64,000 nt of DNA from Tubulanus polymorphus (lineage: Eukaryota; Animalia; Nemertea). A program made the position numbers and the translations under genes. The stretch's first letter is position 1. The number at the start of each line of letters is the position of its first letter. Of this stretch, positions 1 through 59,353 are shown in pieces. The stretch lies in the NCBI RefSeq assembly GCF_964204645.1, contig NC_134031.1:7812001-7876000 (forward strand), in the 5' to 3' direction. The notes under the pieces were generated by a model. That model ran no database searches, was not told the origin of the DNA, and worked only from the letters and a program-made list of their open reading frames with translations.

Positions 1-125
1 TTGGTAGTAAATTAAGCATGCGGAATCCTGGCATGTATGATAATAACCCCTTTCTAACATCAAAAGGTATTTTCTAATGTTGGTTCCTTCATTGCAAGTG
101 AATCTTTATAAAAAGTAAATCTCAC

Positions 126-20796: not shown

Positions 20797-21297
20797 TTTT
20801 TACTTGTTTACTAACAGCTAATAATACGTGTGCTTAAAATGTCCTCGAGTACTTCCTGGCCGTTAGATAGACGTTAAATTGAACAAAATTGAACTTTAGA
20901 TGGATCTTTCATGATGCGCAGACTTGCTATTTTGCCAATGACTTGTTCGAGTCACTTGTTCTGCATTGACAGATGCTCGTCAGTACAACATTAATAAATT
21001 ACTGAAACAAAATACTCCGCGGTTCAACGTTTGACTATCATTTATGGATTAAGATTCATATTCATAGCAAATTCGATAATTCAAATAGTTTGTTTATCAT
21101 AATTCTATTATTTTCTATAATATCTTATAATGATTCTTCCGAAAAAAGAGCGTAATATATTTTGTCGATTCGTAAAAAAAGTTCTTATCCAAGCTCGGAA
21201 TTTCCACCGCTATGTGACCTAGTTTGTGTCTACATTGGGAAACCCTCGTACTATTTTGCTGTTCATGTTCAGGCTTATTGCCGATTAAAACGAGAAA
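20797..21297. promoter_or_regulatory. Putative bidirectional promoter region
   Basis: About 500 bp between the divergent start codons of CLCN2 (20796) and the uncharacterised gene (21298). Inferred from geometry only. Confidence 0.5.
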
Positions 21298-37700: not shown

Positions 37701-38910
37701 ATAGCCAAAAAATTATAGACTCCTAAAATCATTTTCCAGAGTTGAACATGGGAGTATGCTTTGCCATCAGTTTTTTTGGAATTACCTCATTGGAAAATTT
37801 GTGAGCAGTTGTACAGAAAACTTTGCTTAATTTAGCTATATTTTGGAAAATATTTGAAGTTTCTTATATTTGCATTAAGAATTTGGGTTAAAAATTCTTT
37901 TAACATCGATTCTAGATCTCATATTCAACTTGTAAGATAGAGATGCTCGAAAAAATACTAACAAATAAGCTTGCATAATTTATATAAAAACGTTTTATCT
38001 CTTTGCATTAGTTTCATATTTAGTTTCTTATGAATATATATTTTAGATTATACATATATCTGTATTGTATTGGTTTTGATTTAATAAAATCTGCACATTT
38101 AAAGTACCGGTATTGAATCTGATCTTGTTTTACGTTCATTTAGATTTAATATTTTTATTTGGGCTCATCCACCTCTTTCAACACACATGAAAAATCTTAG
38201 GCTAAACAAAAATCATACCTTGTTACCACAGCAGCCAGGTCATTTTTGATACATGTATAATAAAAATTTTTTCAGTTCATTTCTAAAGCTGCCTGGTCTC
38301 TTGTGGTAAAATTGATCACAATTTAAAATAAATTGCCCATGGGCAAAGTGTGGTTTACCTTGAAAGCTAGAGGTTGTTGTTTGGAGTAAGGGCATTGCTT
38401 GAAAAATCTTTTTAATTCGTGACTTCTAAGTTCCACAAGTTTATATTGTATTTTATCTTTCTTAAAGATTTATTTTGTACTCAAATAACCAAAGATATAC
38501 ATTTGTTTATGGTCCACGTCCAAAATTTCGAAAATTGAGGTGTTAGCAAAGTTGTCTGAGCATGGCTGCACCATTTCCAGAATCAAATTGTTAAATCCAA
38601 TGTAATAAAATGTTTTTATGATGTTCATCTCAGTGCTGACACCACGATTTGATTAAAAAGAAAAAATATTTACGAGAAAGGAGAGTTTGGTAGTCGGTCG
38701 GCCACATATAAATTCTTGAAAAAAAGTTATTTCACCCAAAATTTTGAAAAAGGGTTGGTAGGCAATTATATTTTATTCTGAAAATGATTATTCTAAACGA
38801 CAGAATATTGGGTCGGTCGGGCCCGAGAAACACGGTTTTCTTTTGATGTGGCCTAAAACTTGAATTTTTCAACTCCCCTCCCCCATGTACGCTAAATTGA
38901 ACATTTTTTC

Positions 38911-39060
38911 AAATAATAATAATAATATGCGTCTTATATAGCGCTAAATCCAGCCAGGCTGGTCAGAGTGCTTAACATTTTCGGTATCATTACACCGGCC
39001 AATTTTTATACTGTAACATGTATCAGTCATCTCTCCCTGGGAAGCCACACCGCATGCGCA
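38911..39060 (-). mobile_element. SINE 3' remnant
   Basis: The minus strand ends in gcgctatataa...(TTA)n, a tail typical of L2-partnered SINEs. Confidence 0.45.
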
Positions 39061-39469
39061 CGTTACAGTTCCTTCCTGCATGCGTTATAAACGAAAGACC
39101 CCCTATTTTTATTTCAGTCAATACACAATTACAGCTATATCACGACTCAAGTTGTAGATAGTCTCTTGTGCACACCCCAAAAATTTGCCAATTTGTAGGC
39201 TAGTCTGCAGTGACAATTTCCGCCCTTGACCTCTACGTATTCGCGATATCCTCATGTGGTAAAGTCTGAGCTTGGGACATGGACTGATTTCACAATACAT
39301 GTACTCTCAAATACAATACACTCTGCTGAAGTCGAACTTTTTTGTGCTGTAAAAATGCGTCCAACTTGCGTGACAAACAAATATTTCACATTGGGGCCAT
39401 TCATTAATTACGTACGCATTAGGGGAGAGGTCGGTGCAATTGCGTACTGTAATGCTTAATGTATATAAA

Positions 39470-40130
39470 CTAGGGGTCGAGGGACACCATGCCCACTTGG
39501 GAAATGCTTTGAAATGCTCAAAAATCGGACAATTTCAATATTCAAATACAAATACATGTATGTGAAAGATCAAGATAATTGATGGAAGCGCCTTCAAAAT
39601 TTCCCTTGGAACCTCCAATAAAGTACCATGGGCCCAGTAAGATCAACTGAGTACATTTTAGTTTTGAGCACAACTAGGGGTCCAGGGACACCATGCCCAC
39701 TTGGGAAGTGGTTTCAAATGCTCAATTTCAATATTCAACGCCCCCTGGTGACCATATTCAAAACCAAATAACCTTGTAATGTCATGAACTTCAACTTTGC
39801 AATGCAATTGATCATGGTAACAAAATATGCCTAGCTACCAAAAGGTATGACCATTGTCGAAACAAAATATGCTTCAAATATATACGAAAGATCAAGGCGT
39901 CTTCAAAATTTCCCTCAAAAAACCAGCTGATTTTGGCGAACAACAATGGCTGCCAGTCGGCCACCTTGATTCAGACAGGGCCAGTTCTTAAACTGAAGAT
40001 GTGTCTAGGGGAGATTCATGTATAAACCAAATATCAAGACATTACCTTACAGCGTCTTCAAAACTTCCCGGACGGACGAAAAGTGAACGCAATAGCCCAC
40101 TGGGACTTAAGTCCCAAGTGGGCTAAAAAA
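39470..40130 (-). mobile_element. HINE-like elements: complete copy 39674-40130 plus partial copy 39470-39640
   Basis: Both ends present: 5' TT-agcccacttgggacttaagtccc palindrome, and 3' subTIR tcccaagtgggc + small hairpin + CTAG-TT. Confidence 0.8.
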
Positions 40131-40350
40131 AATGGCTGATTTGAGGGTTGAAAAATTCAAATTTTATGCGTACGTAATGAATTAATGATCCCATCTGAGT
40201 TGATAGGAACCAACTTGATCGAAGTCTTCAGTAGAGGTGTTTAAACCAAATTCTGAGTTGATATTTAAAATGATATCATAAAACAACAGAAAATTATCAC
40301 ATGCTCCTTCAATAAAGAATTTATTTTATAATTCTTTATATAAATCGTAT

Positions 40351-43300
40351 TTAGTCATCGGCTTCATCCTCATCTTCCTCTTCATTATTGATCTGGAAGT
40401 ATCTAAGCTCGTAAGATTCTTTATCGTTAGCGACAACTCGTAACCAATCTCTCAAGTTATTCTTCTTCAAATATTTCTTTGTCAAATATTTGAGGTATCT
40501 GAAATATCCGAAAAGCAAATGTATGATTAGGAGGCGAAAATACATTCGACTTGGGGAAGGGGGGGGGGAATCATGTGATGTTATCTAAAATTGAGCAAAC
40601 CTATTCGCTCGAACCAGCACAAAAATCTGCCCCTGAATTTGAGTTTACTGAACCAACTAAAATAGCAGAGTATACAAACCAGGAAGGGCAGTCATGATCT
40701 GACATATTATCTATATACATTGTAAGTGTAAGATCACGGTATTTAGTTTTAGTCTAGTTTCCGTACTTAAAAAACAAGATCAAGTTGTTCTAGACAAATA
40801 CGTCTACGGGTACGCATACCATTAGCGGCATCCAGAAAGTTGAGTTCATCTCACATGATTCAAAACTTGATCACGGATTGGCTAAATTTTATGTGGTTTG
40901 CAGCTAGCAAACACAAGATATCGAGCAATTTTTCGCATGCGACAGATTACACGTGAACTCGCTTGCAACACACTATGCAATAAACTTTGAACACACACTG
41001 TGTGTCTGCTGCTTACTGCACGAGCCTGCTGAGCTAATACTTCCAATCATAATTACCTCTTCGAGAATGGAACCTCACAATTGACGATGATCTTCGACTT
41101 ATTGCGTTCCAGCGTGACGTGGCCATTCAGGTTGTTCGTCTTCCCGGTGACCTTGATTCTCTCGTGAAGGTACTTCTCCTGTCAGCGGGTAATTAAAACG
41201 ACGGTACAAGTGTGAAGTTAGGGAAGATGACCCTAACTCAGCAGACATTTAGGGAAGAGAACCCTAATCAACGTCAAGTCTTAGAATCAGTGTGAAACAA
41301 AAAATGAGATGGCTAACTTTAAAATTCAGATTCAAATTAGGAGGTTTATAACATTTCTGAGCGTGGACATTTTGCGACGCTCTTTCATAGAACATCATTT
41401 TATCTAGATTCATGAAGTAAAAATACTAAATGTATCAAGCTCAGGGATAATCTGAGGATTAGGTTAAAAGCTATCTTGAACCATATAATACAATAGACTA
41501 CTTCTTACTCCGATAATGTGTTAATCAAATTCAAATATCCACTTCCTCATAAAATGCTCTCAGAAAAATATTTCAGTCACATAATTGTTCAGACAAGGTG
41601 AACAGAAAAATATACATCATCACTGAACATAAATTGCGTGTAATATTGTAAATACATCCATATATTATACTTACATAGTTAGCAGCATCCATGATACCAT
41701 CTTCAACTGGAAGGGTACAGTCAATCGTAAATTTCAGGGAAATCTTCTTTTTCTTGCCGCTGGACTTGTGACCCGCTCTCTTGATAGATTTCTACACAAA
41801 TATAAGTAATGGATGAATTTATTTTACCTGATTTAATTTACCCTATTGTAAACCAATAGGCTTGGAAGGTTAGCATTAGAAAATTATCTAAAAGACAGCG
41901 ACTTTCTGGATTTTCCAGTATCTATTCTAAGAGAAAATTCATTTCAGTTATCAACACAGTCCTAACATTTGTTTCGTCATAACCTCTAATCATTAAGAAT
42001 TTATTTCAAGCTGTTTCTCACGACAGAAAGTTCAATTTGATTATACTGGTTTTTTCCTCGACAATTAATCATTCCAGTCAATTACAGACACTGATTTGTA
42101 TTCATATGAATATTATCTAGATTTGTTCAAACCTCTAAGATTGTGCAGATTACTTTTATTAGTTCTTGAGTAATTATTTCTGTGACACTTATGTGTTAAC
42201 TAGGGGTCCAGGGACACCATGCCCATTTGGGCAGTGGTTTCAAATGCTCAACAATCTTAATATTTCAATATTCACCCCCCTGGTGACCGTATACAAAAAC
42301 CAATGACTTTGAACCTCACCACAATCATAGAACATGCCATCAACTACAACTTTGCAATTGATTGTGGTAACAAAATATGCATAGGTATAAATATATAAAA
42401 TACTTAGTTATTGTACCATTCAACGCCCCCTGGTTGGCCATATAAACAAAAACTTTCCCACCTATGAATCAGTACTGGTGACACCAAGACAGTCCTCCTT
42501 ATTACCAAGATGACGTATTTTACCCAGATGAACCAAGATGACATGAAATATAACATATTTATTTATTACTTATCGATTTTAACACTTGAAATCATATTAT
42601 ATCAGTAATAAATGCCTGCTGGAGTAATACTTTACATATTTTGTCGGATATTATTGTAGAAAAATTAATTTTAACTTTACTGAGTTGAGATCGTCGATCA
42701 ATCAAATTCAATGATATATTATTGCTAACCAAGATTACGTATTTGAAGTCAAATTTTTTTTGTGCAAAATATCCGGAAAACTATGTAAATTTTTTCTTTA
42801 CAAAATATCCGGAAAAACATGTAAAATATGACTCTAGAAGGTATTTATTACTGATATAACATGATTTTAAGTGTTAAAATTGATAAGGAATAAATAAATA
42901 TGCTACATTTCATGTCATCTCCGTTGATCTCGGTAAATTACGTCATCTAGGTAATAAGGAGGACCCCACCAAAATGGCCACCAATTGTATCATAATTGGC
43001 CGACAGGTTAAAACATCCCTTTCCAAAGCATACCCATTGAAAAGACAAACAAAGGGGTCATAAAAACTTTTCCACTGCCCTGGTTTGTATATATAGCCAA
43101 ATATCCATCTATCTATATAGTAAGGCATCGCGACAGCCTGACAATGATCCTTAAATGCCAATTGCTTATCGGAACTTAAAAGCGGATAGATGAATAATAT
43201 CAACTAAGGTATTTCTGTGATATTTTTATTTGCAGTTCAAATTTTGCGCCGTTCTCGCAAGATTATCAACAACCCGGAAATAAAATCCAAGCAACCACGA

Positions 43301-43890
43301 CATAGAAAACTCGATCCAAGCCCATCGCCAAACCCATGTGGTGTAGGCAACGTTAAAAGTGGTAATTTTGCATAATTTTCAGGCAAAACCTGTAAGACAC
43401 ATTTTTCCAGGGATATTGTTTGAATGATTCATACCTAATGGAGGTCTTTGCAAATGCCATGTTTTCTCGACCATTTGGCCGAGACTGGCAGCATTGACTA
43501 TCATAGCATCTATCATACTTTGTGATAGGCCTACATAAGTGATTAATGAAATATTTCCGTCTTAAATCTGATCTACCAATTCTTAAGACAGAGGTCTATG
43601 AGCCTACGCCAATGATACAGGGATAATTGAAATCATAGCGTAGATGATTAACGATTATTATTTCAGAGCAGAGGGACTCATAGAATGGTCGAGTTAAGTG
43701 TTGTAAATCGTATGAATAGTTTAACGGCTAAAAGTAGTCATTATAAAATCAGAAGCCACTCGATACGCCTTGCAGTTATCATTAAAGGATTCTTCAAATG
43801 TGGAGTTCAATCTAATAATCATGACGGTAATTTCTTAAGGGGTACGAATCTAAAATCTGCCACAGACAAAATACTTACAGCTTTCACCAT
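40351..43890 (-). CDS. RPL22: 60S ribosomal protein L22 (eL22), 132 aa. Exons: 43879-43890, 41675-41791, 41057-41178, 40351-40498
   Basis: Spliced protein MVKA|[39 protein letters not shown]|[17 protein letters not shown]...PFSKR|[23 protein letters not shown]...YELRYFQI plus acidic tail; GT-AG junctions; AATAAA at 40320-40325. Confidence 0.97.
41554..41630 (-). ncRNA. Intronic box C/D snoRNA in RPL22 intron 2, predicted 28S rRNA 2'-O-methylation guide
   Basis: Box C GTGATGA (41617-41623), D' CTGA (41589-41592), D CTGA (41560-41563), 6-bp terminal stem atgttc/gagcat, and a 12-nt guide CTGTTCACCTTG complementary to the conserved LSU sequence CAAGGUGAACAG. Confidence 0.8.
42493..42963. mobile_element. 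Long-TIR MITE inserted in a HINE-like copy (42200-42990)
   Basis: Imperfect inverted arms of about 150 bp, tcctccttattacc... / ...ggtaataaggagga. Confidence 0.75.
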
Positions 43891-43904
43891 GGTGGCTGAT
43901 ATTT

Positions 43905-43970
43905 CGTGAAGGGAAGTGAAATTATTAGAGACTTCCGGTATCCCCAAACCACGATGAATATGACGTCACG
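43905..43970 (-). promoter_or_regulatory. RPL22 promoter: polypyrimidine (TCT/5'TOP-like) start, ETS and CRE motifs
   Basis: CTTCCCTTC on the minus strand at 43908-43916, about 20 nt upstream of the ATG; ACTTCCGG at 43931-43938; TGACGTCA at 43961-43968. Confidence 0.6.
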
Positions 43971-44352
43971 GTACGGGGGTTTACAAATTGCAATTTTGCT
44001 TGTATTCATCATTCATTATCTTTCTACATCCCTCTTCTGTCAATGTTATTATGAGATTTGAAAACGAGAAAATTAACATGAAAGCGTCCTCATAATGATT
44101 TCTTGATTATCCTTGGAATGCTGCTCTGCTTTCTATAGATGGCAGCACGGTACGATCTCGTGAAGTGATTAGCGCGAAGTTTTGGCACAGATCTTTTGGT
44201 GAAAGCGTGAAATAGAAAATAGATACACCGAGAAGTTGTCACTCTCCTCACATTCGACTTTTGGCGAGTAAGAAAGTATACCTATACATCTAGTAGAGGT
44301 AGGTATGGATTTTTCCATTCGGTGATTGATTTATTTCAAAGTGGCTATTCGT

Positions 44353-45819
44353 CAGTCAGGAACACTTTCCAAAAACGGCTTATTCTGCCAATTTCGGCGT
44401 TTTCCGCCAATAACGGCAGAATCAGCCGTTTATGGATCACTCAGTTTTGAAACTTTTACAGTCGTTTATGGCTTAATCAGCCAGTTTCAGCTCACTAAGT
44501 TTCGAGTTATGCTTTAAAGTTTTTTGCGCACTTCCGGTCAAATTAGCGCATGTTGCCGATTACGTCATAATCTCGAGCAGATGATAAGCTTTCATATGAC
44601 GCTAGGATGGAAATTTTTGAGCTAGGTAAAGTGGTCAAATTCACGTTTTTCTAAATGATTACGTCATATGCAGCCCAAAAACTCCGGGAAAACTCTCAAA
44701 ACTACTACAGCATGAAACAAGTTTATTAATCATGATTTTTGTTAAAAATAAATTTGGGAACTAGTTTTAAAAACTATTATAAAGTTTTCAATTAAATGTT
44801 GCCATGGGTACACATAAAAACATTCGCCATTTCTGGCGTATTCCGCCGTTTTGGCTTTATAATCATAAACTATTAAGCCATTATTGGCAGTCCACTTGTT
44901 ATATATGAGGATTCCCCCACCCGCTTAGACGTTTTCCCTAGTGTCTATAGGGTACTTTTTTTCGGAATAAAATAATTAATTTGCTGAGGTGAACGGATGT
45001 GTAGATATTATATGTTAAAAATAAAAATAAAATTATTATTATAATTATCATTCTCATAAGACAAATCAATCATGGATGTATAAACTAGTGTATCAAAAAT
45101 CTAGTTTTAAGTTTTGCCCATGGTCTTATCTTGCCTAATAAAGCATAGAATGGTTGAGGGATATATTGGACTGCATATGATGTTGGTTAATTGAAGGTAA
45201 TTAACATCTTCGATGCCTCCCAGCTAATTGGACTTGTGATGGGTAGTGATTGAATGAATTGGTGGCCGATGACGTTACAACACTCAAAATCAAAACAGCT
45301 GTATCTAGATTCATTTCAAAATAAAACAAACATTTTCGAGACAATTTGGGATACATGTATGTATATATTTATTACATAGAATATAGGTATAAAGAAAGAA
45401 CAGAATTCAAATACATTTGCCATCGGAAACCCGTACATTTATATTTAATTCTTTCTTGAAGCCTGGAATGGATCAATGAGATTAATTTTTCGGCGCAAAT
45501 ATACAAATGAATGCCAGCAGAAAAGCGATGATGTCATGATAGGGACTCCCATCGAACTAAGCACTATAAATAGCACCTGTAAAACTATCTAAGCTAAAAC
45601 GCCGTTTCTGGCGATGTAGTTTTAAAAACTGTAACAGCTGAAAACGGCGGAAATGGCGTTTTTTAAGAACAAGCCAAAAATGGCAGAAAACGCCGATTTC
45701 GGCTAAATTGGCAGAAGCAGTTTAAAACTGAGTAATCCATAAATGGCTGATTCCGCCGTTATTGGCGGAAAACGCCGAAATTGGCAGAATAAGCCGTTTT
45801 TGGAAAGTGTTCCTGGCTG
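44353..45819. mobile_element. Non-autonomous DNA transposon, ~100-bp TIRs, CAG termini, 5-bp TSD
   Basis: cagtcaggaacactttccaaaaacggc / gccgtttttggaaagtgttcctggctg; TSD ttcgt at 44348-44352 and 45820-45824. Confidence 0.85.
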
Positions 45820-46751
45820 TTCGTACGGACCCGTACGGATTACTCCGGAAGCTAGTCGTACGGACCTATTCAATTTCAATTTATTCATGTTTATTCATCA
45901 TAAATCAAGAGTACGATTGTGAATGAAGAAAGAAACAAAACAAATTCCGTATTATTTGTATGGTATATGCTATTCGTATGGACTACTCCGAAAGTTATTC
46001 GTCGTAGACATAGAACTATTCAGAACAACGTGACGTAGAACAGACAGCATTAATAACAATATAATTGTAGATTGAGAGTCATCAATAAATCTAATAACCA
46101 TAAGTCAGATATTCATTATGCATTGTCTTTTCTTTATTCCGTTTTCAACGATTACTGTAAGATACAAAATAAGGAATACTAAATTTCAGGCATTTAAACC
46201 AGCAGGTGCTGCCACCTTTACTCACATGCCAGAGTAAGCTCACAGAAAATCATGATTTATGCCAATTTATAAGGCATAATAATAGAATTACAAATTTGCA
46301 CATTAATAATACATCTCTAAGGCAATTGATAAGTCGAATGACAAAATGTAATATGCTTAATTCTCTCTAGAAATAATGCACCGAAACTTCACAACAATCC
46401 AAAATTGAACATGGCGCCGGGCGGAAGTTAAATCGCGTCCACGAGGAAACAATTAAAACCATTATTATGCACTTTATAGAGTAAATAGCACTTACACAAA
46501 TAACTAAAACTATGCATTGACAATTAAACTAAAATAATAAAAAGCTTACCGAAACATTTGACCTTCTTAAGGAACTAAAATTGACTTCAACTACAGAACT
46601 GTTTCAGACTTGTTACATCATTGCGCATGCACAAGTATCTCTCGGTCATGCTAATAACCGACAAAAAACGTCTAAACTCCAGAACAACAGAGCGGGCGGG
46701 ATTTGACCGTAACAATAATACACATGAATTACATTATTTTCAGTTATTCTA

Positions 46752-46980
46752 ATTCTATTCTGACAGACCTGGCAATGTAAATAGAATATCCGTACGGATA
46801 ACACATTATTCTATTCTGACGGACCTCGATCGCTACACAAATAGAATGTCCGTATGGATAACACATAATTCTATTCTGACGGACCTCGCTACGTAAAGAA
46901 AATGTCCGTACGGATAACACATAATTCTATTCTGACGGACCTCGATCGCTACATAAATAGAATGTCCGTACAGATAACAC
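46752..46980. repeat. Tandem repeat, 4 x 56-60 bp
   Basis: Units start at 46752, 46808, 46868 and 46924 (attctattctgacggacctcg...aatagaatgtccgtacggataacac). Confidence 0.9.
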
Positions 46981-49900
46981 AATTCAATTCAAATACTTTA
47001 TTGACACTAATAAATTTTACAATAAAACATTTTAGTGATACGTCAACAAAGTTAAACAAGACAGAGAAATGGGTAAAATGATGACAATTTATAAAACATA
47101 TAAAACATGTGAAAATATATACAGGGTAAATATGAACAAGTCGACTGGATGTGTTCAAAGATGGCAGCACAGTAAATTAGAATGACCCAAGTAGACTGAT
47201 TTAAATACCTGACGTCCTGATATCAGCAATGGAATTAATAAAATTACTGACTAAAATAAAAATTTAATGGTCATCGTTGTAGCTCATTAAAAATATAAAA
47301 AATTCATCGTCTGACATTAGGTCAATATCCACGAATTCGCGAAGCTTTTCGAATAGGGTATTTCTTACATGAGTGTAAAGTGGACAGAACAACAAAAAGT
47401 GTTTTTCATCCTCGACCATATTCAAATTACAATATTTACAGTGCGTTGGTCTGCTGCGATGAAAGGCTTAGAATATCTGTCGCTTTCGATTTGAAGTTTA
47501 TGGGCACTGGAGCGTAGTCTAGAAAATGCTCTACGCTTCACAAAGGTTTTGATAAATGATAAATAGTTTTTTAAACAAAAGATATTCTTAAAGAGTTTAT
47601 AGGTCCTTAGCTTGGATTTTCCTTTGCCTATGTCGTTCGCAGAAACAAAAAGAGACCAATTAGATTTAAATACTGATTGAAGCTTCAATTTTAGAAAGTT
47701 GGTCGATTTTATGTTGCGCTTGTTCCCTTGGCTACACCAAATATCAGGAAAAGAGAAATTACACCAAAGAGTTTTTATGTTGGAGGACCAATTGCTGTTT
47801 TGGGTGCCGTAATATGAGGAGGAGAGACTTTCGATATATGCCTGTCTTACTAGGGAATTGACATCTCGTGAGCAAACACGAAACCAATATCTACTGCTCC
47901 GATGGAGGGCTGAAACGAGTATGGGATACTGACCAAGCTCCCCCATGATAGCAGCATTGGAGGCATTCTTATGCACACCTAAAAGATATTTACAAAAATG
48001 AATGTTTATTTTCTCCATCGGTAAATTATTGCATAAAAGCATAAAGTTACTGTTATCTGGCTTCAGTTTTTGAATATAAAATGGGGCCCAGACCTCACTA
48101 CAGTAAGTTAAGATGGGCAAGACTAAGGTGTTAAAAAGCGTGACGACATTGTCTCTCATGTCTAAGGTCTTTAGTTTAAAAAGTACTTTCCGAGCTTGGT
48201 CCGTGAGATGATCACAAGCTTTTTTAAAAGTTCCATTAGCACTAAGGACGATTCCGAGGTAGCAATATGTGTCAACTACTTCGACGTTGGAGCCATTATA
48301 TGTAAAGGTATAATTATTTAGTTTTCGGCCAGATGAATTGAAAATTATTATCTTAGTTTTGTTAAGATTAACTTTTAACTGCCACTGCTGGCAATAGCCT
48401 ACTCAGAGAGTTTATTTAATGCAGATTGGAGACCTTTTCTAGATTTGGAAATAATTAATAAATCATCTGCATATAAAAGACAGTTGATGGCTTTATCATG
48501 GAGTTTCACTGGATCAGAATTAGTTTTAAAGATGTCGGGTAGGTCCGAAATGTAAAGATTGAAAAGTAAAGGGCTAAGAACACAGCCTTGTTTTACACCG
48601 ACTTTGGATTGAAATTCAGGGGTTAAGCCATTTTGGAGTTTAACAGAATAATTTACATTTGAATACATACTCTCAATAGTTGCAAGAATATTGCCGTCAA
48701 TACCAAGTTTAAGTAACTTATAGATCAAGAACCTTCTGAGGACAGAGTCAAAAGCGGACTTAAAATCTACGAAACAACAATAAACTTTGCTTTTACAAAG
48801 CTTATTTATAAATTTATCAATGATTGCTTTTAGTGTTAAAATATGGTCTGCCGTTTGGGTACCTTTGCGGAAGCCTATTTGACAACTTGGTATAAGCTTT
48901 TCCTTTTCAGAGAAAAGAGATAGTCTGTTGTTTAAAACAATACAAAATAGTTTACAAAGATTGCTGCCAACTGCTATCCCTCTGTAGTTTCCAGGGTTAG
49001 CGGGGTCACCTTTCTTATGAAGAGGGGTAAGAGTATTACAACGCCAGGTATCAGGGAAACTACCGTTACATAGAATATCATTGAAAGCTCTTTAAGGAGT
49101 GGTAAAATAAAAGGTTTGCTGGCTTTGATCATCTCGTTTAATAAAAGGTCAGTACCACTGGCTTTATAGTTTTTTAGTAAAGTAATGCTTTTAGCAATTT
49201 CTAGTTCAGTGATTGAATAATTTAACTCGCAGAAAGATTTTCCTCTATTTTCAGTTATGAATTTTTCTGTTTCCTTGTCAACATCACTGACAGTATCCGA
49301 CAGTGAATAGTTGACTAAAGATGTAAAGTGATCTATCCACTGAGTAGCCGAGATTGTACTGGATGAATTATTAGAATTAAGGGCCTTTAGCTCATTAAAC
49401 AGTGTCCAATAGCGTCTAGGGCTATTATTGGAGAGACTTTCCATTTGATTTAGAATGTCAGCTTTAAAGGCGAGCCTTTTTTTAATCAATATTTTCTTAT
49501 ACCGTTTTTGTTTTCTCTTAAATTCACTGAGCAGGGCCAGATCAAATTTTTTGTGCAATTGGGAGCCTAGAGATTTCAAGTCTCTTAAGAGTGCGACATT
49601 CAGCATCAAACCATTTCAAGCTATTATTGATTTTATTAGTAGGTTTTTTTCCAGTCGATTTGGGTTGGGGGACTGACTTCTTAATATTTACTACATCAGC
49701 TGCAGTGTGCAGCATGTCTGTGATATCCTGGATAAGGTTAGAATTATCGCAAGGATAAGTAGATAGTTCTTGGATTTTAGAGGACAGGATAGGGTTTAGA
49801 AAAGCCTGACGAAACAATTCGTCATCACCCTCTTTCCAGATATATTTGGATTGGGGAATCAAAGGGATCTGGGGGGAGATTTCAGATCTTCTAAAGAGAC

Positions 49901-50531
49901 CAGTATTAATTATAGATGACAGCAAACAATGTATGGACAGCTCATTTGGACTATGAACAAAAAGCATATCGACCATATTGAGCATACGAGTTGGGCAGAG
50001 TGCATAATCGATGACACTTGGTGAACCTGTGTGACTGTAGCAGGTATGGTGTCCCGCATAGTCACCAAGGGTACGACCATTCAAGATACGAAGCCCAGTA
50101 GATTTACAGAGGGACAGCAGTTGATGACCCCTGTCGTCAACAGCACGACGATCACAATTTTGTCTAGGTAGGAATACATCAGATACATAATTAGGTAATA
50201 GTGAATTAACTGGTGAAGAATCGTCACAACAAGTCAGGTAGCATGCCAGTATGAGCATTAAAATCCCCATAAATCAAGCAGTCACCACATTTTGAAAATT
50301 TTGCAATATCACTTTCAAGTAAATCAAAAATATTCTCATTTTTCTTACCATATTCACTATTGCTTACATAAACAAAGGAGATATATATGTCACGATCAAG
50401 GTTAAAAAAGTTTTTTTGCAATTTGATTCAGAAAATTTCAGAGTTATCATTTTCAATAATTCTTACACCCTTGCGTATATTTTGTTTTATGCATACAGTG
50501 ATCCCACCATAAAAGCGTGTGGCTTTATCAG
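46981..50531 (-). mobile_element. Degenerate APE-RT LINE (RTEX-like), ORF2 frameshifted and 5'-interrupted
   Basis: EN motifs GDFNA and SVIDY; RT motifs GVKQGCVLSPLLF and LLYADD; C-terminal HKLQIE..RY and EDEKHFL..C knuckle; AATAAA plus (ATTGA)n tail at 46981-47002. The clade call is tentative. Confidence 0.85.
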
Positions 50532-50532
50532 T

Positions 50533-50954
50533 TTTTAGCCCACTTGGGACTTAAGTCCCAGCGGCTATTGCGTTCACTTTTCGTCGTCCGTCCGTCTGTC
50601 CGTAGACGGAATCCAGTTATTTTGGGAAGTTTTGAAGACACTTCAAGGTAACGTCTTGATATTTGGGTTACACGTGTATCTACCCTAGACACATCTTCAG
50701 CCCAAAAACTGGCCCTGTCAGAATCAAGATGGCTGACTGGCAGCCATTGTTGTTCGCCAAAATCAGCACTTTTTACACATTTTTGAACTTTTTGAGGGAA
50801 ATTTTGAAGACGCTTCGATCAATTACCTTGATCTTTCGGATATATATGAGTCCCCCCAGGGCCCATCAACGAAACAAAAATTGGGTCGGTCGGACTCAAG
50901 ATGGCCGTCCTATGACCTTTTTAGTGCCCAAAAATGTTAATTTTCGCCCGAATT
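50533..50954 (+). mobile_element. HINE-like copy (5' part) inserted at TT in the LINE
   Basis: Family 5' palindrome and (CGTC)n; truncated at the R2 3' junction. Confidence 0.8.
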
Positions 50955-51264
50955 ATACAGACTCATCATTTCTCCCCGAAAGGGGCCGAGGTCACCTCCC
51001 CACCCCCTCCGGGGAGTGAACAAGTTAGGCGACCAGCCCCTCCCAGGTCCGTCACATGCGAGGCGGAACTCATTTGTTAACAGTTAGAAAGCACGTATCA
51101 TTTAATAATGGGTGTCCAATATATTTTATTTGTATGGTTAGTACATTAGAAACTTGTAAGCTATAAAGCGGCGTCTTAGCCGAGTCATCGCGTGGTCTAG
51201 TCATGCGGTATGACCGCCCTAAGACATAGGGAACCGGTCCTAGATCCTGATGCTCGTAGAGAAC

Positions 51265-54200
51265 CTATCTGATCCTCGTATTTGGAGCGATGATCCGCCT
51301 ACTACGCTTATGAAGTCGCCAGATGACTGTCGATTCATAAAGGCTGATCATAGAAAGGGCCCTTAGAGAGTGGGCAATTCCCAGAGATGAGAATTCCCCG
51401 CGGATCCGCGGTTTCCCGCGGATTTCAGTATTGAAAAATATCAATTTTCCAAATAGTCCAAAAATGATGTAAAAGTATGGGGGGGGGGGTGATGATCTCA
51501 CTCAATTGGTCCGGCGCGATCGGTAATCAGGTGAACCGTAAAAGCGTTCAGTGCCTGTTTTACTTATCGTCACGTAAAATTATCGCATTTCAATGCATAT
51601 TCATTGCAACGCAGTGATTTTGTATGTACATTTGTACTACGATGAGTTTGTATGTATTTTATCGATCGGTTGCAGACACGCACGCACAGCAACAGTAGTA
51701 ACGTATATAGGTCTACTTACTGTTGCTGCGTGTGTGTGGCGAACGCTTTCGGATATTATACACTACTTGGTGATGATTTTTAGTGAGCATTCATCGGCGC
51801 ATTTTTACTGCAATAATTCAGGGCTCGACCCGTAATGCATGAGATGCTGAATGTCATCAAATGAGGATGTACCACATTGGAACTAGCCATTACCTTCCAA
51901 AATATAATAGTCGTTCATGGGTTCGAGATCGCTCTAAGTGCTCGGAAAACGTATTTAATTTCTAAAATTTTCTGGGGGGAGGGCCCCCAAACCCCCCCTA
52001 AATAGCTTCGCGCCTTCGGCGCTCGCTAGTGCTGACGGCTACGCCATCAGCTGGTTCGCGTATGTCACTCAAGAAAAATAACCCGCGGATTTTACAGGTC
52101 GGCGTTCTCATCCCTGATTCCTAAAGTTCGCATGCTTCTCAGTGTCATACTAGATGTCGTACCGGCGTCTCCGATAACCACCGCAACCACTTGCCTTGGA
52201 AGGTTAAGATAGTCAGCGGGGAGATCAACTTTGGCCGACAGTAGACAGTTATATTTCGCTTTCTTCTCAGTACGGGTCATAAAGATCATTGGATCTTTTT
52301 CGTACGGGACCGTGACATCTACGAAGTAAACACTTTTACCGTCGCTAAATGTAATGTCAGGCCTGTAATTAGTCGAGCCGACACTTTATGTGCGCTCTAA
52401 TTGTACGAACCCTGTCGGGTGCTTCGTCTTCAGCTCTTTACCGAGCTTCCGAACTACTAAGTCATGTCTTTTACTGATAGCGTCCTTATTGAATGGACAT
52501 TCGTTAAGTATATGTAAGTCTGTCTCTGCGGTCTGTTTGCATCGTCTACAACGGCGATCAGCATCTTGGCCTTTGCCCCTATTCAACGCTACGTTTGTTG
52601 GTAGTGTACCAGAAAGGATACGCTTGGAGGTAATGAACGCTGCCCCCGTGAACTTCCCTTCGTCGAGCCATTGCCGATTCGTCTGAGTAGACATCATCGT
52701 CTTGAGTGCCGTCCCATTGGTCATATTGCCGACCTCGTCAAATCGTCTTTTGTTTACTTCCTTTTTCAGATGTGCTGCTTCACTATCTGCTAGTTTAAGG
52801 AATGTCAACTCCTTGAGTCGTCTGTCTTCTAAATGTTTGCCTATTTCTCTCATCACAGGATCCTCTGATACCTGAAGCTTCTTCACAGCATTGCTGCGAA
52901 TGATAATGATGAGCGTCGCCAGCTCCGGAATGCCGCCACCTTGCTTACAGTGTAACCACGCTGTACTGGTGAACTCCGGTAGCCGAAGAACCTTCTTGCT
53001 CCACTTTCGAATCTTCCGATCAAGAAGCCGAAGGCGAGCAATACCCATCGAAGAAAGACGCAAGACATGCAATAACCGTGGGATTATTACAGACTTCAAG
53101 CCAAATAGCCTTTGATGTGGCTTAAGTGGTGCGGCTTTAAGCCTAGACAACCAAATGTCCAACTGAGAGACGTCGAACGCAATTCGCCCGTCTGGGTCAA
53201 TTGAAACACCTAGATACTTAACTAAGTCAGAGTAAGTGATACTCGGTATATCGCAGCCGTTCCAACGACAGTGCACCGCTGTCACTGTCCTCCTAAACAT
53301 ACGGTGTGGAACCGGTGTCGTTTTCAAACTACGACATCTGCCCGCGTTCACAGACATACGTTTCGTACTAAAGAATTCTTCCGATAAAGCGATTAATTGA
53401 TTCATCTCTTCCTCAGAGTGAGCCAAAAGCACAAGATCGTCAGCGAAAGCCATACATGCTACGCTGCGACCGTGGACGGTCATACCGCATGACGTCTCGT
53501 TAAGCCTTGTAATCAGTTCATCTAAAACCGTATTGAATAGAAATGGGGACAGGGGGCACCCCTGTTTCACCCCATTGCGTATATTGATTTCGCCCGTAGA
53601 CGATTTGCCATTTGAGACCGAAGTCTTTGCATCAGTGTAAAGATCTTGCACGATCCTGACTACGTTTTCAGGGACTCGTTTTCTCCGAAGAGCACGATAG
53701 ATAGCATCCTGCGGCATAGTATCGAAAGCCTTCGCTAAATCGATAAATACCATGTGTGTCTCACGCCGGGCTTGACTAATAGAGCTTTGCACCAGCTTGA
53801 TATTTTCAAAACAACCGTCCAGCGGCGTAAATGCCTTCTGCCTAATGTTAAACGGACAGTGAACCCTGAGCCGTTTATCCCACAGCTTAGCATAGAGCCG
53901 GTTAAAGAGAGAGCCTATAGTAATAGGGCGCCAATTGTCAACCTCGTTTCTCGACCCTTTCTTATACAAAAGAATGGTCCGGTTAACTTTGACTTCAGCA
54001 GGGATGTGCCCTTGGGCACGCCAAACGTTGAAGATCGCACTGATACGAGTGGCTCCGATCTTTTTCAAGTTGGCAAGAGACAAATACCTATCAGGGCCGG
54101 CGGCTGTGCTGAGTTTAAACTCCTTAAGCGCAGCTTTGACCGACTTTGGAAGAACACTTCCGTACAAAACCTCATCTTCGAAACGCTCTGTATCAGACCC

Positions 54201-56132
54201 GTCATCGGGCTCATGATACGTGGAAGGTTCCTCAAGCCTCCTCTTATAAACCTTTTCGATGTCACCGATTGATGGTACGGTGTCATCTACACAGGTGAGA
54301 TCATCTCCATCGATGATGGATTTAATTGTGCCAGAAGGGTTTTTAGTGAATTGTTTCTGTGTAACGGCGTACCGCTCGAGCCTCTTGGCGAAGCGCTTTT
54401 TGCGCATCTCAGTACGGTCCGTTGTTAGTAATGGTTGTCTGTTAACTCTCGCCGCCCTCTTTTTTGGACGGGAGTTGCATTGAGTTGTACGTTTACCATA
54501 TAGTGATTCAATCGCTTTAGCAACCGATGGCCAGTGACCATCTTCGTCCCCCACTAGTGTGCACGATATATAGTGCTTTATTGCTGCGTCTAGAACGCCT
54601 AACTCCGAATCCGGAGTGCCATCCATGAATCCTAAAGCAGCGTCAAAGGATTCTTGATGAGGTAAATGGATGGGTGTGTAATTGTCTGTATTGGTATCAT
54701 CTTCCCCGTAGGATTTGTCTATATTCTTGTGTGTATAATTGTCTCTATTCGTGATTGTTTCAGGGTCGGGATCAACTTCCCTTCCCAGTGACTCTGGCGT
54801 ATCGGCCAGTGTATTCATGTTCTGATTGATGGAGCCTTCTACTCCGTGAGCTGTAGTTTTTGCAGAGCCGTCCACCGGACGCCTGCCTAACGTGCGGCGC
54901 CTTTTACCAGGGGCCGCAATGCAGAAAGAAGCGGGATCTGAGATCGATCCAATGCACGGCATATCCACAGCGGCGACTGTCGCACGGGAACCTTCGTCAA
55001 AGGGAACGGTTACCGGCTGACTCGCCGGAACCACTGTAAGTACGTTGCCCAAGGTACTTGTGGTGTCCGGAGAGGCCCTGGCCTTTTTCCTACCCGGCGC
55101 CCCCTCCGGAGCACCTGCAGGTTTGCGCTTGCCTCTAATGATAGGCAAGTCCATGCATAATTCGCCCCTAGAGTCCGAAAGAGAATCCCCGGCAATCACT
55201 GCCGCTTCCGACAAAGCATTACCTGGAGAGACTACGGATGTGGGCAACTGCCCCCGCGGTCCCGACAGAACAGCGACTGTCTCATGAGGGCAGTTGACCG
55301 CATCAGTAGTCGATGCAGAGAAACATACACCTTCGAGCGGCCGAGCTGATTCCGACTCAGCGCCTTCGGCGCCGCTCCTACGACTACTGGATAGAGTAAA
55401 GGGATTAATTGTGATATTTATAGTGGCTTTTAGCCTTTCTACCTCTCGTTCAACTTTATGCTTATGATCTAGGCATCTTCGTGCCGTAGAAATTGATTGT
55501 ACCGATCTTAAGGGGAATCTCCCCTTTAATGCAGTATTGACGTTAAGTTTTGAAGTACTAAGGAGAAGCTTTGCCTCTTCCTTTGCTAGTTTAGTTAACT
55601 CAGCTATGGACCACGGTTTAATCGTTTTATCGCCCCTTCTTAATTTATTAAGGTGTGCAGCGTCCTTATCACGGATCTCTGCTTCAATAGTGAGATTATG
55701 CTCAAGCCTATGAGCTGATGCCTTATGGACACCTAGCCCGTTACTACTGTTAAATTTCCTACTACAGAAGGGACATTGGAAGTCTCCTTCATTGCTTTTA
55801 GGTTTGCCGTTGCAATAGCGACGGTGAGTGCCAACAGATCTGGCATTATTAGCTGTATAGCTATGACATTTTCCGCACTTATAACTAATTGAATCAAGCG
55901 GTATACTATGAGTATCGTTAAAATGGCGCCGGAACAAGCGGTCACCAGAAAATTCTAGTAAGCAAACTGGACACACTAAAGGTGAGTCAGACCCTCTATG
56001 CAAAACCTCGGGAGGGGCTCCCCTTGAACCCGTCAATCGAACCGGATCTCGGCATCCGTCAACCATCGGCGGACTCGATTTACTAGCATCGCTAGTGTTA
56101 GATTTAGTTAGACTTTTCGGAACCAGTAACAA
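51265..56132 (-). pseudogene. R2-like ORF (~1375 codons reconstructed); in-frame TAA at 52386-52388 and MITE insertion at 51382-52116
   Basis: The 1248-aa ORF (WRPITI, DLAKAFD, GVKQGCPLSP, FADD, YLG, CRRC..ETDLHILNEC, RHD) continues in frame as YRPDI...DVTVPYE...KKAKY and, after removing the MITE, RTLGI|AHSLRALSMISLYESTVIWR. Confidence 0.9.
51382..52116. mobile_element. 735-bp hAT-like MITE with 5-bp TSD inside the R2 endonuclease
   Basis: TIR cagagatgagaa / ttctcatccctg; TSD attcc at 51377-51381 and 52117-52121; excision restores the R2 frame. Confidence 0.9.
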
Positions 56133-56309
56133 TGCCCCTGCAGCTGGGTGGTTAGCCCGGCGCAGGTTAAGGCGGTTGGGGAGGGTATTACCGCCTCCCC
56201 GTTCGGTCCCGGTGGTGATTGGTCAGCACTACTCGTGTAGCCTGTTTCCGGCTGCAGCCTGGCCTGTAACTTAGGCTCGGTGGGCCCACCACGCGGACTT
56301 ACTTACTCC

Positions 56310-59300
56310 CCCCCCCAACGACCTTGTGAAGTTGAGTTAAGGGTTGGAGAGTTTCAGCTTTGCAACCAAATTTGAGAAAATTAAGCCGTTTCATGCATTC
56401 TGGGGGGCATCTGGAATAAGATGACACTGAACAATTCTGACCTATTTTGAAGCAAATTAAAAAGTAGTGGCTTACCATAAAAATTTCACAGTCCAATCTC
56501 CCTTCACCAAACATATTTATTCACATAACTTGTATAAAATAACCGATAAATCCGTGTCTGTCCTAGTCTCTCAGTCTCTATCCTACGGTTTATGTACTGT
56601 ACTCCAAGATATAATATTTAGTACTTGAATATTTACACTATAAACAATAATAATCCGAGCTAAGTACTGGTATCCAATTAAACGTTTCCAAAAATTGAGA
56701 GCCGATGCTCTGAGTGCTTTACAAAGTCTCTAATTGTTTCGTTGATGTTAATTTTGTCTGTCTATTCTTTGTGCACGTGCAGCAACAGGAGGTCATTCAG
56801 TTTTCTTTGCGTTAAGGTGGAACGTAAATATGTTTTCAGTCTTTTCAGTGCAGAGGATGACCTCTCAGAGGTGGCATTTGTAGCAGGTAGCACAAGTATC
56901 AGATTTAGAACAGTGCATATTTCTGATAAGTAGCAAGGGACAGCTGTCGGCATCGCTTTGAAGTGATCAATGATATCCTGCAGTGTTACTTCTGAGTCAC
57001 AGTCGCAAAACTTTACTTCCAAAGTTTTTAGTTGTGTTTGTAATAAATCACTCAAAATCGGATCCATAGAAACTAACAACAGCCGAAAATTGTTCTTCGT
57101 AATCCCGACCATTGCATGCATTGATAATAAGATCCTGTAGATGTTTATACTGATTAAATCCCTCCTGATCAAATCGACTTTCGATAGAAATTATAATTCT
57201 GTCCAAAACATCAAAGTACTGAGATCTGAAGTAGTCACGTGGAGTTCCAGGATACTCTGGAGCTGCATTCCCCATTTCAAATCTAGCTGGTGTATTTCCT
57301 CTCCGTGGAAGTTTAGGATCACTTATTTCCTGCTTTGGATATCCATCTTCATCAGTTTGTTGTGCCATTTTTAATACTGTATCATAAAACAAATCGAAGT
57401 CTCTATCAGTTCGTTTTGCCTGTAGAGTTGAGAGTGTATCCATAGCACATTTTTGACCAGCAGCTGCAGTTAGATTTGGATTCTGGAGTGTTTTACTGAG
57501 ATAATCCGCATGTCTCAGGACTAATCTGGCCAAGTTGACTCCCCAGGAAAAATCCCACTGTTTCATCTGTGATTGAACGCCAATAATCCTTGCTTTTGTT
57601 TCAGTGTCTTTGACATAATCTGTTTGCTCCCATAACTCTTGTAAAATCTGATAATTATCCAAGATACTACTGAGGAAAGCGGCTCGAACAGTCTATCTAG
57701 TAGGACACAGAACACGGAGACCAGGTGTATTAGGTTCCAGCTCTTCTTTAATCTTATGAAATATTCCATCTCTACGCGGAGAATATTTCACCAGTTTGCA
57801 TATTTCGTGGGAAATATCAAGAGCAGCCTTCGTAACTTTTACAGCTTTAATGGCATCATTTGCTGCGAGATTTAGTGAATGCCCGTAACAATGAATGAAT
57901 ACAGCTCGGGGTTCATGGGCTTGGACTTTTGCTGCGAGCCCACTTTTTTTCCAGTCATATTACTGGCGCCATCATAACATTGTCCTCTGCACTGAGAATA
58001 GCTCAATTTGAGACGAGTGAGCACATCGTGTACCACGGCCGCTAAAGTGTCCGCAGTTATATCTGACACATGGTACATACCAATGAACTGAAAGGTCACT
58101 AGCTACCCATCTCAAGACTATGACCATTTGTTCTTTATTCGAATTATCGGTTGCCTCATCCACCATAATACTAAAGAATTGCGATTCTTTAATTCTGGAT
58201 ACGATAGTACGCAGTACTTTCATGGCAAGGACGTTGATGAGTTCATTCTGGCTATCATGGCTAACATATTTATTACATTTTTTGTCCAGCCATCTTAACA
58301 TTGACGAATCATCAGAAGCACGTAACTTAAACAGCTGTATGAAATGGCCACTTTCAGTATCGTGCCCTCAGAATGGAAGTCCTTGCCGACCTAGGAATCT
58401 GACATTCTCAAAGAGTTTCTCAGCATACTCTTGTTGTGGATTTTTTCTTTAGCATGAATTTCACTAAGAGACTCTCCAACGTCTTTTGTACTATTCGGCA
58501 GTGTAATGACTCTCTCCATGGCCTCCTTGTGACACTTAGTTCCCTCGTGATCCTTGAATACTCCATTCGCCTCTTTCCAATTTGAAAATCCTCTCTCGAT
58601 GAAAGCTAAATCAGTTTTTGAATTTGCCAGTTTATTTTCATTTTTTGCTCTTGTGCAAACATAACATAGAACGATGTCGTTGTTCTCGCGGTATTCCAAC
58701 CAAGGATATTTGTCAAACCACTCCGGTTGGAATCTCCTTTTCAGTTTAGTTTTTTTGCCGAATTCTCTGTATGGAAATTCCAGATTTCTTGGCTGATTGG
58801 GTGCATTTAGTCCAGCAGAACGGAGGCTGGAATCTGGCTGCTGTTTATCGGTTGAAACATGACCAGTCGTCTGAGTTTCTAGCTGTGATTCTTGACTGAG
58901 AGAATCACAATCAGTAGTCGGGGTTTCTAGCTCAACAGAATTAGATTCTTGACTATCAATGGATCTCTTTTGTTTTTTGAAATAACTTAGTATTGAAGAC
59001 ATCTTAGCCCTGTTATGATAAGGTCTCTAATGAGGAAGCATGGTCTTAAAAATAAAGGTAGTCATGCTATGGTCTAGACATAATAAATCAGCAATTAGCG
59101 GATTTTGACAGCTTTTAAGAACTGTTTACATACTTTGGATCTTGCTGTGAATACTACTAGTACTGACATACTGTTGTTTATATGGTCCAGACTTCACACT
59201 CACACAGTCACATACACTCACACTTATAAACAGCTGTTGTCGGGAAGCTGGGAAATGCTTTGATGTTTGAAACTTAATTAGGAAAATGTCATGATCTGAA

Positions 59301-59353
59301 AAATGATTGCCCCGACCTTGGTCGGGGTGGTCGGGGCGGTTCCGGCGCCTCTG
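56310..59353 (-). mobile_element. hAT transposon with frameshifted ZMYM1-type transposase (about 56690-59002); one TIR retained
   Basis: TTF zinc finger (WFDKYPWLEY..C..C), DUF4371-like FSIMVDEATD, GQCYDGA, and hATC LVLPATNATSERS.S.LKRLKTYLRST; terminus cagaggcgccggaac at 59339-59353. Confidence 0.88.

What the first reader, a model, noticed from the sequence alone, without database searches (positions are those of the whole stretch)
50955..56300. Three-zinc-finger + Myb R2-clade retrotransposon sitting outside rDNA
Seen: a single ORF with CCHH-CCHC-CCHH fingers, a Myb domain (KPWSIAE...RFPLRSVQSI), RT, CCHC knuckle and RLE. Only two evident lesions (one TAA, one cleanly removable MITE), so a ~1375-codon protein is reconstructable. 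The flanks are a hAT subterminal G-run and a HINE copy; no 28S (TTAAGG|TAGCCAAA) or 18S sequence is present. Known: this N-terminus defines the R2-A lineage, normally rDNA-specific (R2; R8/R9 retargeted within rDNA), though some non-specific R2 families exist. Inference: a retargeted or specificity-relaxed R2 family, possibly with a new DNA target, which is relevant to R2-based gene insertion tools.
Basis: partly seen in the sequence, partly recalled or inferred. Interest (0 to 1): 0.8.

Follow-up and report, generated by a model that had tools for sequence, protein, structure and literature searches.

The report
Stray copy of 18S-targeting R2 retrotransposon
This is a real, nearly intact R2-type jumping gene, but it begins with a 19-letter piece of the worm's 18S ribosomal RNA gene and its closest relatives sit at that exact 18S spot, so it is most likely a stray copy of an 18S-specific (R8-like) lineage, not one with a new or relaxed target.

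Summary
On the minus strand there is one R2-type ORF with CCHH-CCHC-CCHH fingers, Myb, RT (FADD), a CCHC knuckle and an RLE. It is broken only by one TAA and one 735-bp MITE. The true ends are 56367/8 and 50960, not 56300 and 50955.

The claim that no 18S sequence is present is wrong. The first 17-19 nt of the element match this genome's own 18S exactly (nt 1206-1224). That 16-mer occurs 18 times in 268 Mb: 16 times in rDNA and twice at the 5' ends of the only two copies that keep their ends (this one and an 874-bp internally deleted relative on contig 6).

Eight of 11 nearest relatives checked sit inside 18S at exactly that position (after GCTGAAAC, before TTAAAGGAATTGACGG). They come from marine metagenomes and the flatworm Macrostomum lignano. 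The window element falls inside their clade (SH-aLRT 100).

The lineage is therefore 18S-specific, like Hydra R8, which is known to lie inside clade R2A. This copy is an off-target insertion made from an rDNA co-transcript, with extra nucleotides at the 3' junction and a deleted target. No dispersed family exists, and no copy was found in the 16 assembled 18S units. Verdict: a new member of a known kind, of modest interest.

The parts
56350..56368 (-). 18S rRNA-derived 5' tag (17-19 nt, matching own 18S nt 1206-1224). The outermost T at each end is ambiguous.
56133..56349 (-). It is shared with the contig-6 relative. The predicted structure pairs the tag with an internal segment.
52386..56132 (-). 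Main ORF piece, 1248 codons, ending in the in-frame TAA (52388..52386). Contains three zinc fingers at 55710-55973, Myb at 55488-55619, RT at about 53202-53957 (FADD at 53436-53447) and the CCHC knuckle at 52497-52550.
52117..52385 (-). Same-frame continuation after the TAA: the restriction-like endonuclease (RPD..D..E..K..KY). The last 5 nt (GGAAT) are the upstream copy of the MITE target duplication.
51382..52116 (-). Inserted 735-bp MITE (terminal inverted repeat CAGGGATGAGAA, 5-bp GGAAT duplication). It belongs to a family with more than 40 copies at 96-99% identity.
51265..51381 (-). C-terminal tail of the ORF (38 codons plus TAG), beginning with the second GGAAT copy.
50960..51264 (-). 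3' UTR ending in ...AATGATGAGTC with no poly(A). The contig-6 relative has the same end.
50955..50959 (-). Five extra nucleotides (TGTAT) between the element's 3' end and the flanking repeat.
50532..50954 (-). 3' flank: the last 423 bp (positions 837-1260) of an abundant ~1.26-kb HINE-like repeat. This is the site of first-strand priming.
56369..59353 (-). 5' flank: a two-copy hAT-like element (inverted repeat CAGAGGCGCCGGAA). Compared with its copy on contig 2, it lacks its last ~96 bp.

Best explanation
This is an off-target (ectopic) copy of an 18S rDNA-specific lineage of the R2A clade. That makes it an R8-type element, not a family with a new or relaxed target. Shown: the domain set; the 17-19-nt 18S tag at the 5' end of both end-bearing copies; the precise shared 3' end; the 18S residence of the relatives at one site; and the placement of this element inside their clade. 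Inferred: master copies sit (or sat) in 18S genes between ...GCTGAAAC and TTAAAGGAATTGACGG... and are co-transcribed with the rRNA. The RNA is then cut about 17-27 nt upstream within 18S, by analogy with the HDV-like ribozyme of R2, which cleaves up to 36 nt upstream in 28S. The element's protein starts reverse transcription at the exact 3' end of the RNA. In this case priming occurred at a nick or break inside a HINE-like repeat rather than in 18S, with five untemplated nucleotides added. [quoted passage not shown] The copy then decayed, gaining one TAA and one MITE.
For: Own 18S reads ...TATGGTTGCAAAGCTGAAAC|TTAAAGGAATTGACGG, and window 56368..56350 matches it at 19/19 while contig 6 matches at 17/17. 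The 16-mer occurs 18 times in the genome: 16 in rDNA plus exactly these two 5' ends, against about 0.1 expected by chance. Eight of 11 relatives are flanked by 18S at that position. Two of them carry tandem 18S duplications of 27 nt (Macrostomum) and 9 nt at the 5' junction, the known footprint of an RNA that carries upstream rRNA (PMC3774820). FastTree and IQ-TREE both place the window inside an 18-row clade (support 100) that holds seven 18S-verified rows. Only two places in 268 Mb hold the 5' junction or the 3' end, and there are no 5'-truncated dispersed copies. The flanks show no further 18S similarity beyond chance. RNAalifold pairs the tag with an internal segment whose two differences between the copies keep the pairing, and finds two compensatory pairs elsewhere. 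R8Hm lies inside R2A, and stray non-rDNA R2 copies are known in birds (PMC5035012).
Against: No copy was found in any of the 16 assembled 18S units, so 18S residence in this species is inferred, not seen. The rDNA array is clearly under-assembled. No canonical HDV-like ribozyme was detected. With only two tagged copies, a tag that has become a fixed part of the element cannot be strictly excluded. The upstream target deletion could also post-date the insertion.
Confidence: 0.8

Rival explanations
1. This is a specificity-relaxed R2 lineage. It now moves between non-rDNA sites, and the 18S tag is a fossil that became part of its 5' UTR.
For: Both end-bearing copies lie outside rDNA with unrelated flanks. 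No 18S-resident copy exists in the assembly. The first 34 nt, covering the tag plus 17 nt of the element, are identical in the two copies, so conservation of the tag alone is not decisive. Non-specific R2 families do exist (PMC5035012).
Against: Only two ends are present in 268 Mb and there are no 5'-truncated copies. The two copies are only 75-83% identical, so each looks like a separate escape rather than a burst. Every relative with an informative flank is in 18S.
Confidence: 0.08
2. The copy was made in trans by another LINE's machinery, or by template switching from the neighbouring repeat's RNA onto R8 RNA, giving a chimeric retrocopy.
For: The 3' end abuts, 5 nt away and in the same orientation, a 5'-truncated abundant repeat with an A-rich end.
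Against: The repeat has internal tandem repeats, a 3' hairpin and no target duplications, which fits a Helentron-type (HINE) DNA element rather than a retroposon. No target duplication flanks the composite. The element has no poly(A). The contig-6 copy has the same precise 3' end next to unrelated DNA.
Confidence: 0.05
3. A piece of rDNA carrying an insertion was moved at the DNA level, and its flanks were later lost.
For: Orphan rDNA fragments occur in many genomes. Bird R2 copies with fragmented 28S flanks are reported (PMC5035012).
Against: The 18S flank is 17-19 nt on the 5' side and 0 nt on the 3' side in two independent copies, with nearly the same tag start. Random breakpoints would not repeat like this.
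Confidence: 0.03

Closest known systems
R8 (R8Hm-A/B) of Hydra magnipapillata
   Same: It is an R2-superclade element placed inside clade R2A and specific for the 18S rRNA gene rather than 28S (PMC5035012).
   Different: The host here is a ribbon worm (per earlier notes), and relatives occur in a flatworm and in marine metagenomes. R8Hm is reported to make a 9-bp target duplication (PMC6895275), while the 18S-resident relatives here show none. Whether the 18S site is the same, and whether the RTs are sister groups, could not be tested because no R8Hm sequence was at hand.
A-clade R2 (e.g. R2Tg of zebra finch, R2Lp)
   Same: It has the three N-terminal fingers CCHH-CCHC-CCHH plus Myb, RT, CCHC and RLE. 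R2Tg is the best match among solved structures.
   Different: Those insert at the canonical 28S site. This lineage's tag and relatives point to 18S. Identity to R2Tg is low outside the RT.
R2NS families (R2NS-1_SMed, R2NS-1_CSi) and cockroach R2-like elements
   Same: They are R2-type elements found at non-rDNA sites (PMC5035012; PMC7650587).
   Different: Those are multi-copy, with copies more than 98% identical to their consensus at many unrelated sites. Here there are two old, divergent copies, each with an 18S tag.
R2 SIDEs (short internally deleted elements; PMC3414825)
   Same: The 874-bp contig-6 relative keeps only the 5' UTR region and the 3' end, as SIDEs do.
   Different: It is a single copy outside rDNA. 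Its mobilisation has not been shown.

Membership tests
R2 superclade (RLE-bearing non-LTR) | Single ORF with N-terminal zinc finger(s) plus Myb, central RT, and C-terminal CCHC plus PD-(D/E)XK endonuclease | tested here: met
R2 superclade (RLE-bearing non-LTR) | RT groups with R2 rather than NeSL, R4, HERO or CRE | tested here: inconclusive
   R2Tg scores 6e-92 and R2Bm 8e-66 against L1 at 1e-17, and the element nests among R2-like proteins. No NeSL, R4 or CRE references were available for a formal test.
R2 sensu stricto | Insertion at the canonical 28S site (TTAAGG|TAGCC) | tested here: not met
   No 28S sequence lies at either flank. The assembled 28S genes are uninterrupted.
R2A clade | Three N-terminal fingers: CCHH, CCHC, CCHH (PMC5035012) | tested here: met
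R8 (18S-specific R2A lineage) | Copies inserted at one specific site of the 18S rRNA gene | tested here: inconclusive
   This copy is outside rDNA but carries a 17-19-nt 18S tag. Eight of 11 relatives are in 18S at that position. No 18S-resident copy exists in this assembly.
R8 (18S-specific R2A lineage) | RT clusters with R8Hm-A/B | not testable with these tools
   R8Hm sequences are in Repbase only, and the original paper is not held.
R8 (18S-specific R2A lineage) | 9-bp target-site duplication, as reported for R8Hm | tested here: not met
   The 18S-resident relatives show a 0-2-nt loss and no duplication flanking the element. This counts against an identical integration geometry but not against 18S specificity.
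Non-specific R2 (R2NS) | Many near-identical copies at unrelated sites | tested here: not met
   Two end-bearing copies at 75-83% identity, plus two internal fragments.

The most novel reading that the evidence does not exclude
The 18S-specific clade found here spans a ribbon worm, the flatworm Macrostomum and many marine-metagenome hosts whose 18S genes differ widely. It may be a retargeting of R2A separate from Hydra R8, given the different junction geometry (no 9-bp duplication). It may also be a widespread, so far undescribed group whose intact members recognise an 18S site that is conserved across animals.
Probability: 0.3. Interest if true: 0.55.

Novelty: new member of a known kind. Interest (0 to 1): 0.35.

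Why it matters
This corrects an attractive but wrong lead. The element does not point to a new non-rDNA target for R2-based gene insertion. It does show that 18S-specific R2A elements, so far described only from Hydra in the papers I could read, occur in Spiralia and in many marine organisms, with intact ORFs among the relatives (for example P0001 and P0004). Their site appears invariant across animals (my own knowledge of 18S, not tested here), so natural intact members could be compared with 28S-specific R2 proteins to learn how three-finger N-termini are re-aimed. The stray copies also act as a natural read-out of the RNA's 5' end, which lies 17-19 nt upstream within 18S.

Tried and rejected
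- Rfam scan of 50400-56900 at E<=1: no ribozyme, R2 3' element or rRNA hit.
- A hand-written HDV-like descriptor on the 5' regions of the window, the contig-6 copy and six 18S-resident relatives gave no more hits than shuffled sequence. No conserved L3-type core motif was found. A ribozyme is therefore not shown.
- Local alignment of 150 nt of each flank against 18S around the site scored no better than shuffles.
- An 11-nt match (CGGCTTAATTT) to 18S lies 10-20 nt upstream of the 5' junction. It is also present in the contig-2 hAT copy and has E about 4, so I treat it as chance.
- A 12-mer resembling AATTGACGGAAG lies 140 nt downstream of the contig-6 copy. I judged it chance.
- No target-site duplication was found around the element or around the element-plus-repeat composite.
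- The 96-aa endonuclease piece alone finds nothing in the PDB at E<=1. Its identity was settled by alignment to P0001 instead.
- The original R8 paper (Kojima et al. 2006) is not held, so the R8Hm site could not be compared.
- The large protein-representative search, structure prediction and complex prediction were not used because nothing hinged on them.
The pieces were searched separately.
Full report
**What is there.** The minus strand of the window holds one long reading frame, 56132..52386 (1248 codons).
- Pfam finds RVT_1 at residues 726-977 (E 2e-31) plus weak zinc-finger and zf-RVT hits.
- Motif positions: finger 1 CCHH at 54-75, finger 2 CCHC at 86-107, finger 3 CCHH at 120-141, the Myb-like stretch at 172-215, the RT active site FADD at 896-899, and the CCHC knuckle at 1195-1212.
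- The frame stops at a single TAA (52388..52386). It continues in the same frame for 89 codons through a restriction-like endonuclease that aligns to residues 1155-1239 of the nearest relative, P0001.
- It is then cut by a 735-bp MITE (52116..51382) with terminal inverted repeat CAGGGATGAGAA and a GGAAT duplication on both sides. More than 40 other copies exist at 96-99% identity.
- The 38 codons after the MITE align to P0001 residues 1238-1264, directly contiguous with the endonuclease piece.
I searched the pieces apart and built no read-through version.

**Kinship.**
- Among solved structures the best match is the A-clade zebra-finch R2Tg (E 6e-92). Two other R2 proteins follow, then R2Bm (8e-66). 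L1 ORF2p scores only 1e-17.
- The word-based protein search gave 181 hits. The best share only 43% identity, and most come from marine metagenomes.
- Relatives with complete N-termini share the CCHH-CCHC-CCHH pattern. Kojima et al. 2016 give this pattern as the mark of clade R2A (PMC5035012).

**True ends.**
- A genome-wide DNA search found one full copy (this one), a 626-bp fragment at 93% on contig 12, a diverged RT fragment on contig 3, and an internally deleted 874-bp relative on contig 6 at 75-83% identity.
- The contig-6 relative shares the window sequence from 56366 at the 5' end down to 50960 at the 3' end. Both copies end in ...AATGATGAGTC without poly(A), and their flanks are unrelated.
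- The element is therefore 56367/8..50960. That is 5.4 kb, or about 4.67 kb without the MITE.

**The key result: an 18S tag.**
- I fetched contigs for the nearest relatives and scanned them with Rfam. P0003 and P0010 sit inside the 18S gene, with the downstream flank resuming at SSU model position 1118.
- The 18S sequence just upstream of those insertions is ...TATGGTTGCAAAGCTGAAAC. The window element begins with GGTTGCAAAGCTGAAAC.
- This genome's own 18S (contig 12, L084) reads ...TATGGTTGCAAAGCTGAAAC|TTAAAGGAATTGACGG.... Window 56368..56350 matches nt 1206-1224 at 19 of 19 positions, and the contig-6 copy matches 17 of 17.
- The 16-mer GTTGCAAAGCTGAAAC occurs 18 times in the 268-Mb assembly. 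Sixteen are in rDNA units, and the other two are exactly the 5' ends of these two copies. About 0.1 would be expected by chance.

**The lineage is 18S-specific.**
- Eight of 11 relatives examined are flanked by 18S at this same position: P0003, P0010, P0013, P0011, P0018, P0004, P0017, and P0023 from the flatworm Macrostomum lignano, GenBank contig NIVC01003830.
- The other three contigs show no rRNA flank at all.
- The 3' junctions read element|(T)AAAGGAATTGACGG, with no target duplication.
- The host 18S sequences are only 77-83% identical to each other over their 3' portions, so the hosts are diverse.
- In a 101-row FastTree and a 41-row IQ-TREE (LG+C20 PMSF), the window element falls inside an 18-row clade with support 100 that contains seven of the 18S-verified elements. 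The Macrostomum element lies just outside.

**How the tag arises (inference).**
- R2 RNA is cut out of the rRNA co-transcript by an HDV-like ribozyme. In many lineages this cleaves up to 36 nt upstream within 28S. Tandem duplications of 13-28 nt of upstream rRNA at some 5' junctions are its footprint (PMC3774820).
- The same footprint appears here. The Macrostomum copy carries a 27-nt tandem 18S duplication and L087 carries a 9-nt one at the 5' junction.
- The 17-19-nt tags on the two worm copies fit an RNA that begins that far upstream in 18S.
- I could not show a ribozyme. Rfam found nothing, and a canonical HDV-like descriptor did no better than shuffled sequence.
- RNAalifold on the two worm 5' UTRs does pair the tag (GUUGC) with an internal segment. 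That segment's two differences between the copies (AG versus GA, opposite UU) keep the pairing. Two compensatory pairs occur elsewhere. With only two sequences this is weak support.

**How this copy got here (inference).**
- The 3' end is followed by five extra nucleotides (TGTAT) and then by the last 423 bp (positions 837-1260) of an abundant ~1.26-kb repeat.
- The 5' flank is a two-copy hAT-like element with inverted repeat CAGAGGCGCCGGAA and its 5' end at ~59353. Its contig-2 copy runs 96 bp further to its 3' inverted repeat, and that stretch is absent from the window.
- The two flanks were therefore not contiguous before insertion.
- The simplest reading has four steps: target-primed reverse transcription starting at a nick or break in the repeat; addition of untemplated nucleotides, as R2 protein is known to do when the RNA lacks downstream target sequence (my own knowledge of Luan and Eickbush's in-vitro work); joining of the cDNA's 5' end by 1-2 nt of microhomology inside the hAT; and loss of the DNA in between.
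- The deletion could instead be later and unrelated.

**Why not a relaxed-specificity family.**
- Only two places in the genome hold the 5' junction or the 3' end.
- There are no 5'-truncated dispersed copies.
- The two copies are old and divergent, which looks like two separate escapes.
- The published non-specific R2 families have many copies more than 98% identical to their consensus (PMC5035012).
- The same paper notes that many bird R2 copies lie next to fragmented 28S or non-rRNA sequence, so stray copies are not unusual.

**Caveats.**
- None of the 16 assembled 18S units carries the element. Sixteen units is a small fraction of a normal array, so residence in 18S in this species remains inferred.
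- I could not obtain R8Hm sequences or the original R8 paper. I therefore cannot say whether this clade is the same lineage and site as Hydra R8. R8 is reported to lie inside R2A and to make a 9-bp target duplication (PMC6895275), which the relatives here do not.
- Earlier notes of this scan name the genome as the ribbon worm Tubulanus polymorphus. I did not check this.
- The R2 surveys I could read do not mention Nemertea or any 18S-specific R2 other than Hydra's.

**Verdict.** It is a decayed stray copy of an R8-type, 18S-specific lineage, a new member of a known kind. The wider 18S-specific clade uncovered along the way is the more interesting by-product.

Noticed in passing
L032:1501-2374 (G000 contig 6, 18067699-18068572, minus): An 874-bp internally deleted relative of the element (75-83% identity). 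It keeps only the 5' UTR region with the 18S tag, 135 nt of the N-terminal coding part and the 3' end. It resembles the R2 'SIDE' non-autonomous derivatives and also lies outside rDNA.
   Followed up: partly
L091:2700-6600 (Macrostomum lignano NIVC01003830): A three-finger R2A-type element with a complete ORF sits inside the 18S gene of this flatworm at the same site. It has a 27-nt tandem duplication of upstream 18S at the 5' junction and an A-rich 3' end.
   Followed up: partly
window 51382-52116: A 735-bp MITE family (inverted repeat CAGGGATGAGAA, 5-6-bp target duplication) with more than 40 copies at 96-99% identity, so it looks recently active.
   Followed up: partly
window 50532-50954; also 26543-27369, 31620-32095, 61280-61580 and others: A very abundant ~1.26-kb repeat (about 2,900 first-look candidates) with internal ~154-bp tandem repeats, a 3' hairpin and an A-rich end, and no clear target duplication. 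It looks like a Helentron-derived HINE.
   Followed up: partly
window 56369-59353 and G000 contig 2 around 9727282-9731115: A hAT-like element present only twice in the genome (97% identity), with a transposase C-terminal dimerisation region at about 56762-57662. The window copy lacks its last 96 bp.
   Followed up: partly
window 56378-56388: An 11-nt exact match to 18S nt 1266-1276 (CGGCTTAATTT) lies 10-20 nt upstream of the element's 5' junction. It is also in the contig-2 hAT copy, so it pre-dates the insertion. It is statistically unremarkable (E about 4), but its position is curious.
   Followed up: partly
window 49542-50421 (minus): ORFs with an apurinic-type endonuclease motif (GDFNAH) of another LINE, just beyond the HINE fragment.
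   Followed up: no
window 8001-12000: A stretch with clearly raised G+C (0.50-0.54 against about 0.37 around it) and strong AT skew at 8-10 kb.
   Followed up: no
G000 contig 12, 3350366-3351036: A 626-bp internal fragment of the same element family at 93% identity, on the rDNA-bearing contig but 3.6 Mb from the array. It contains stop codons.
   Followed up: no
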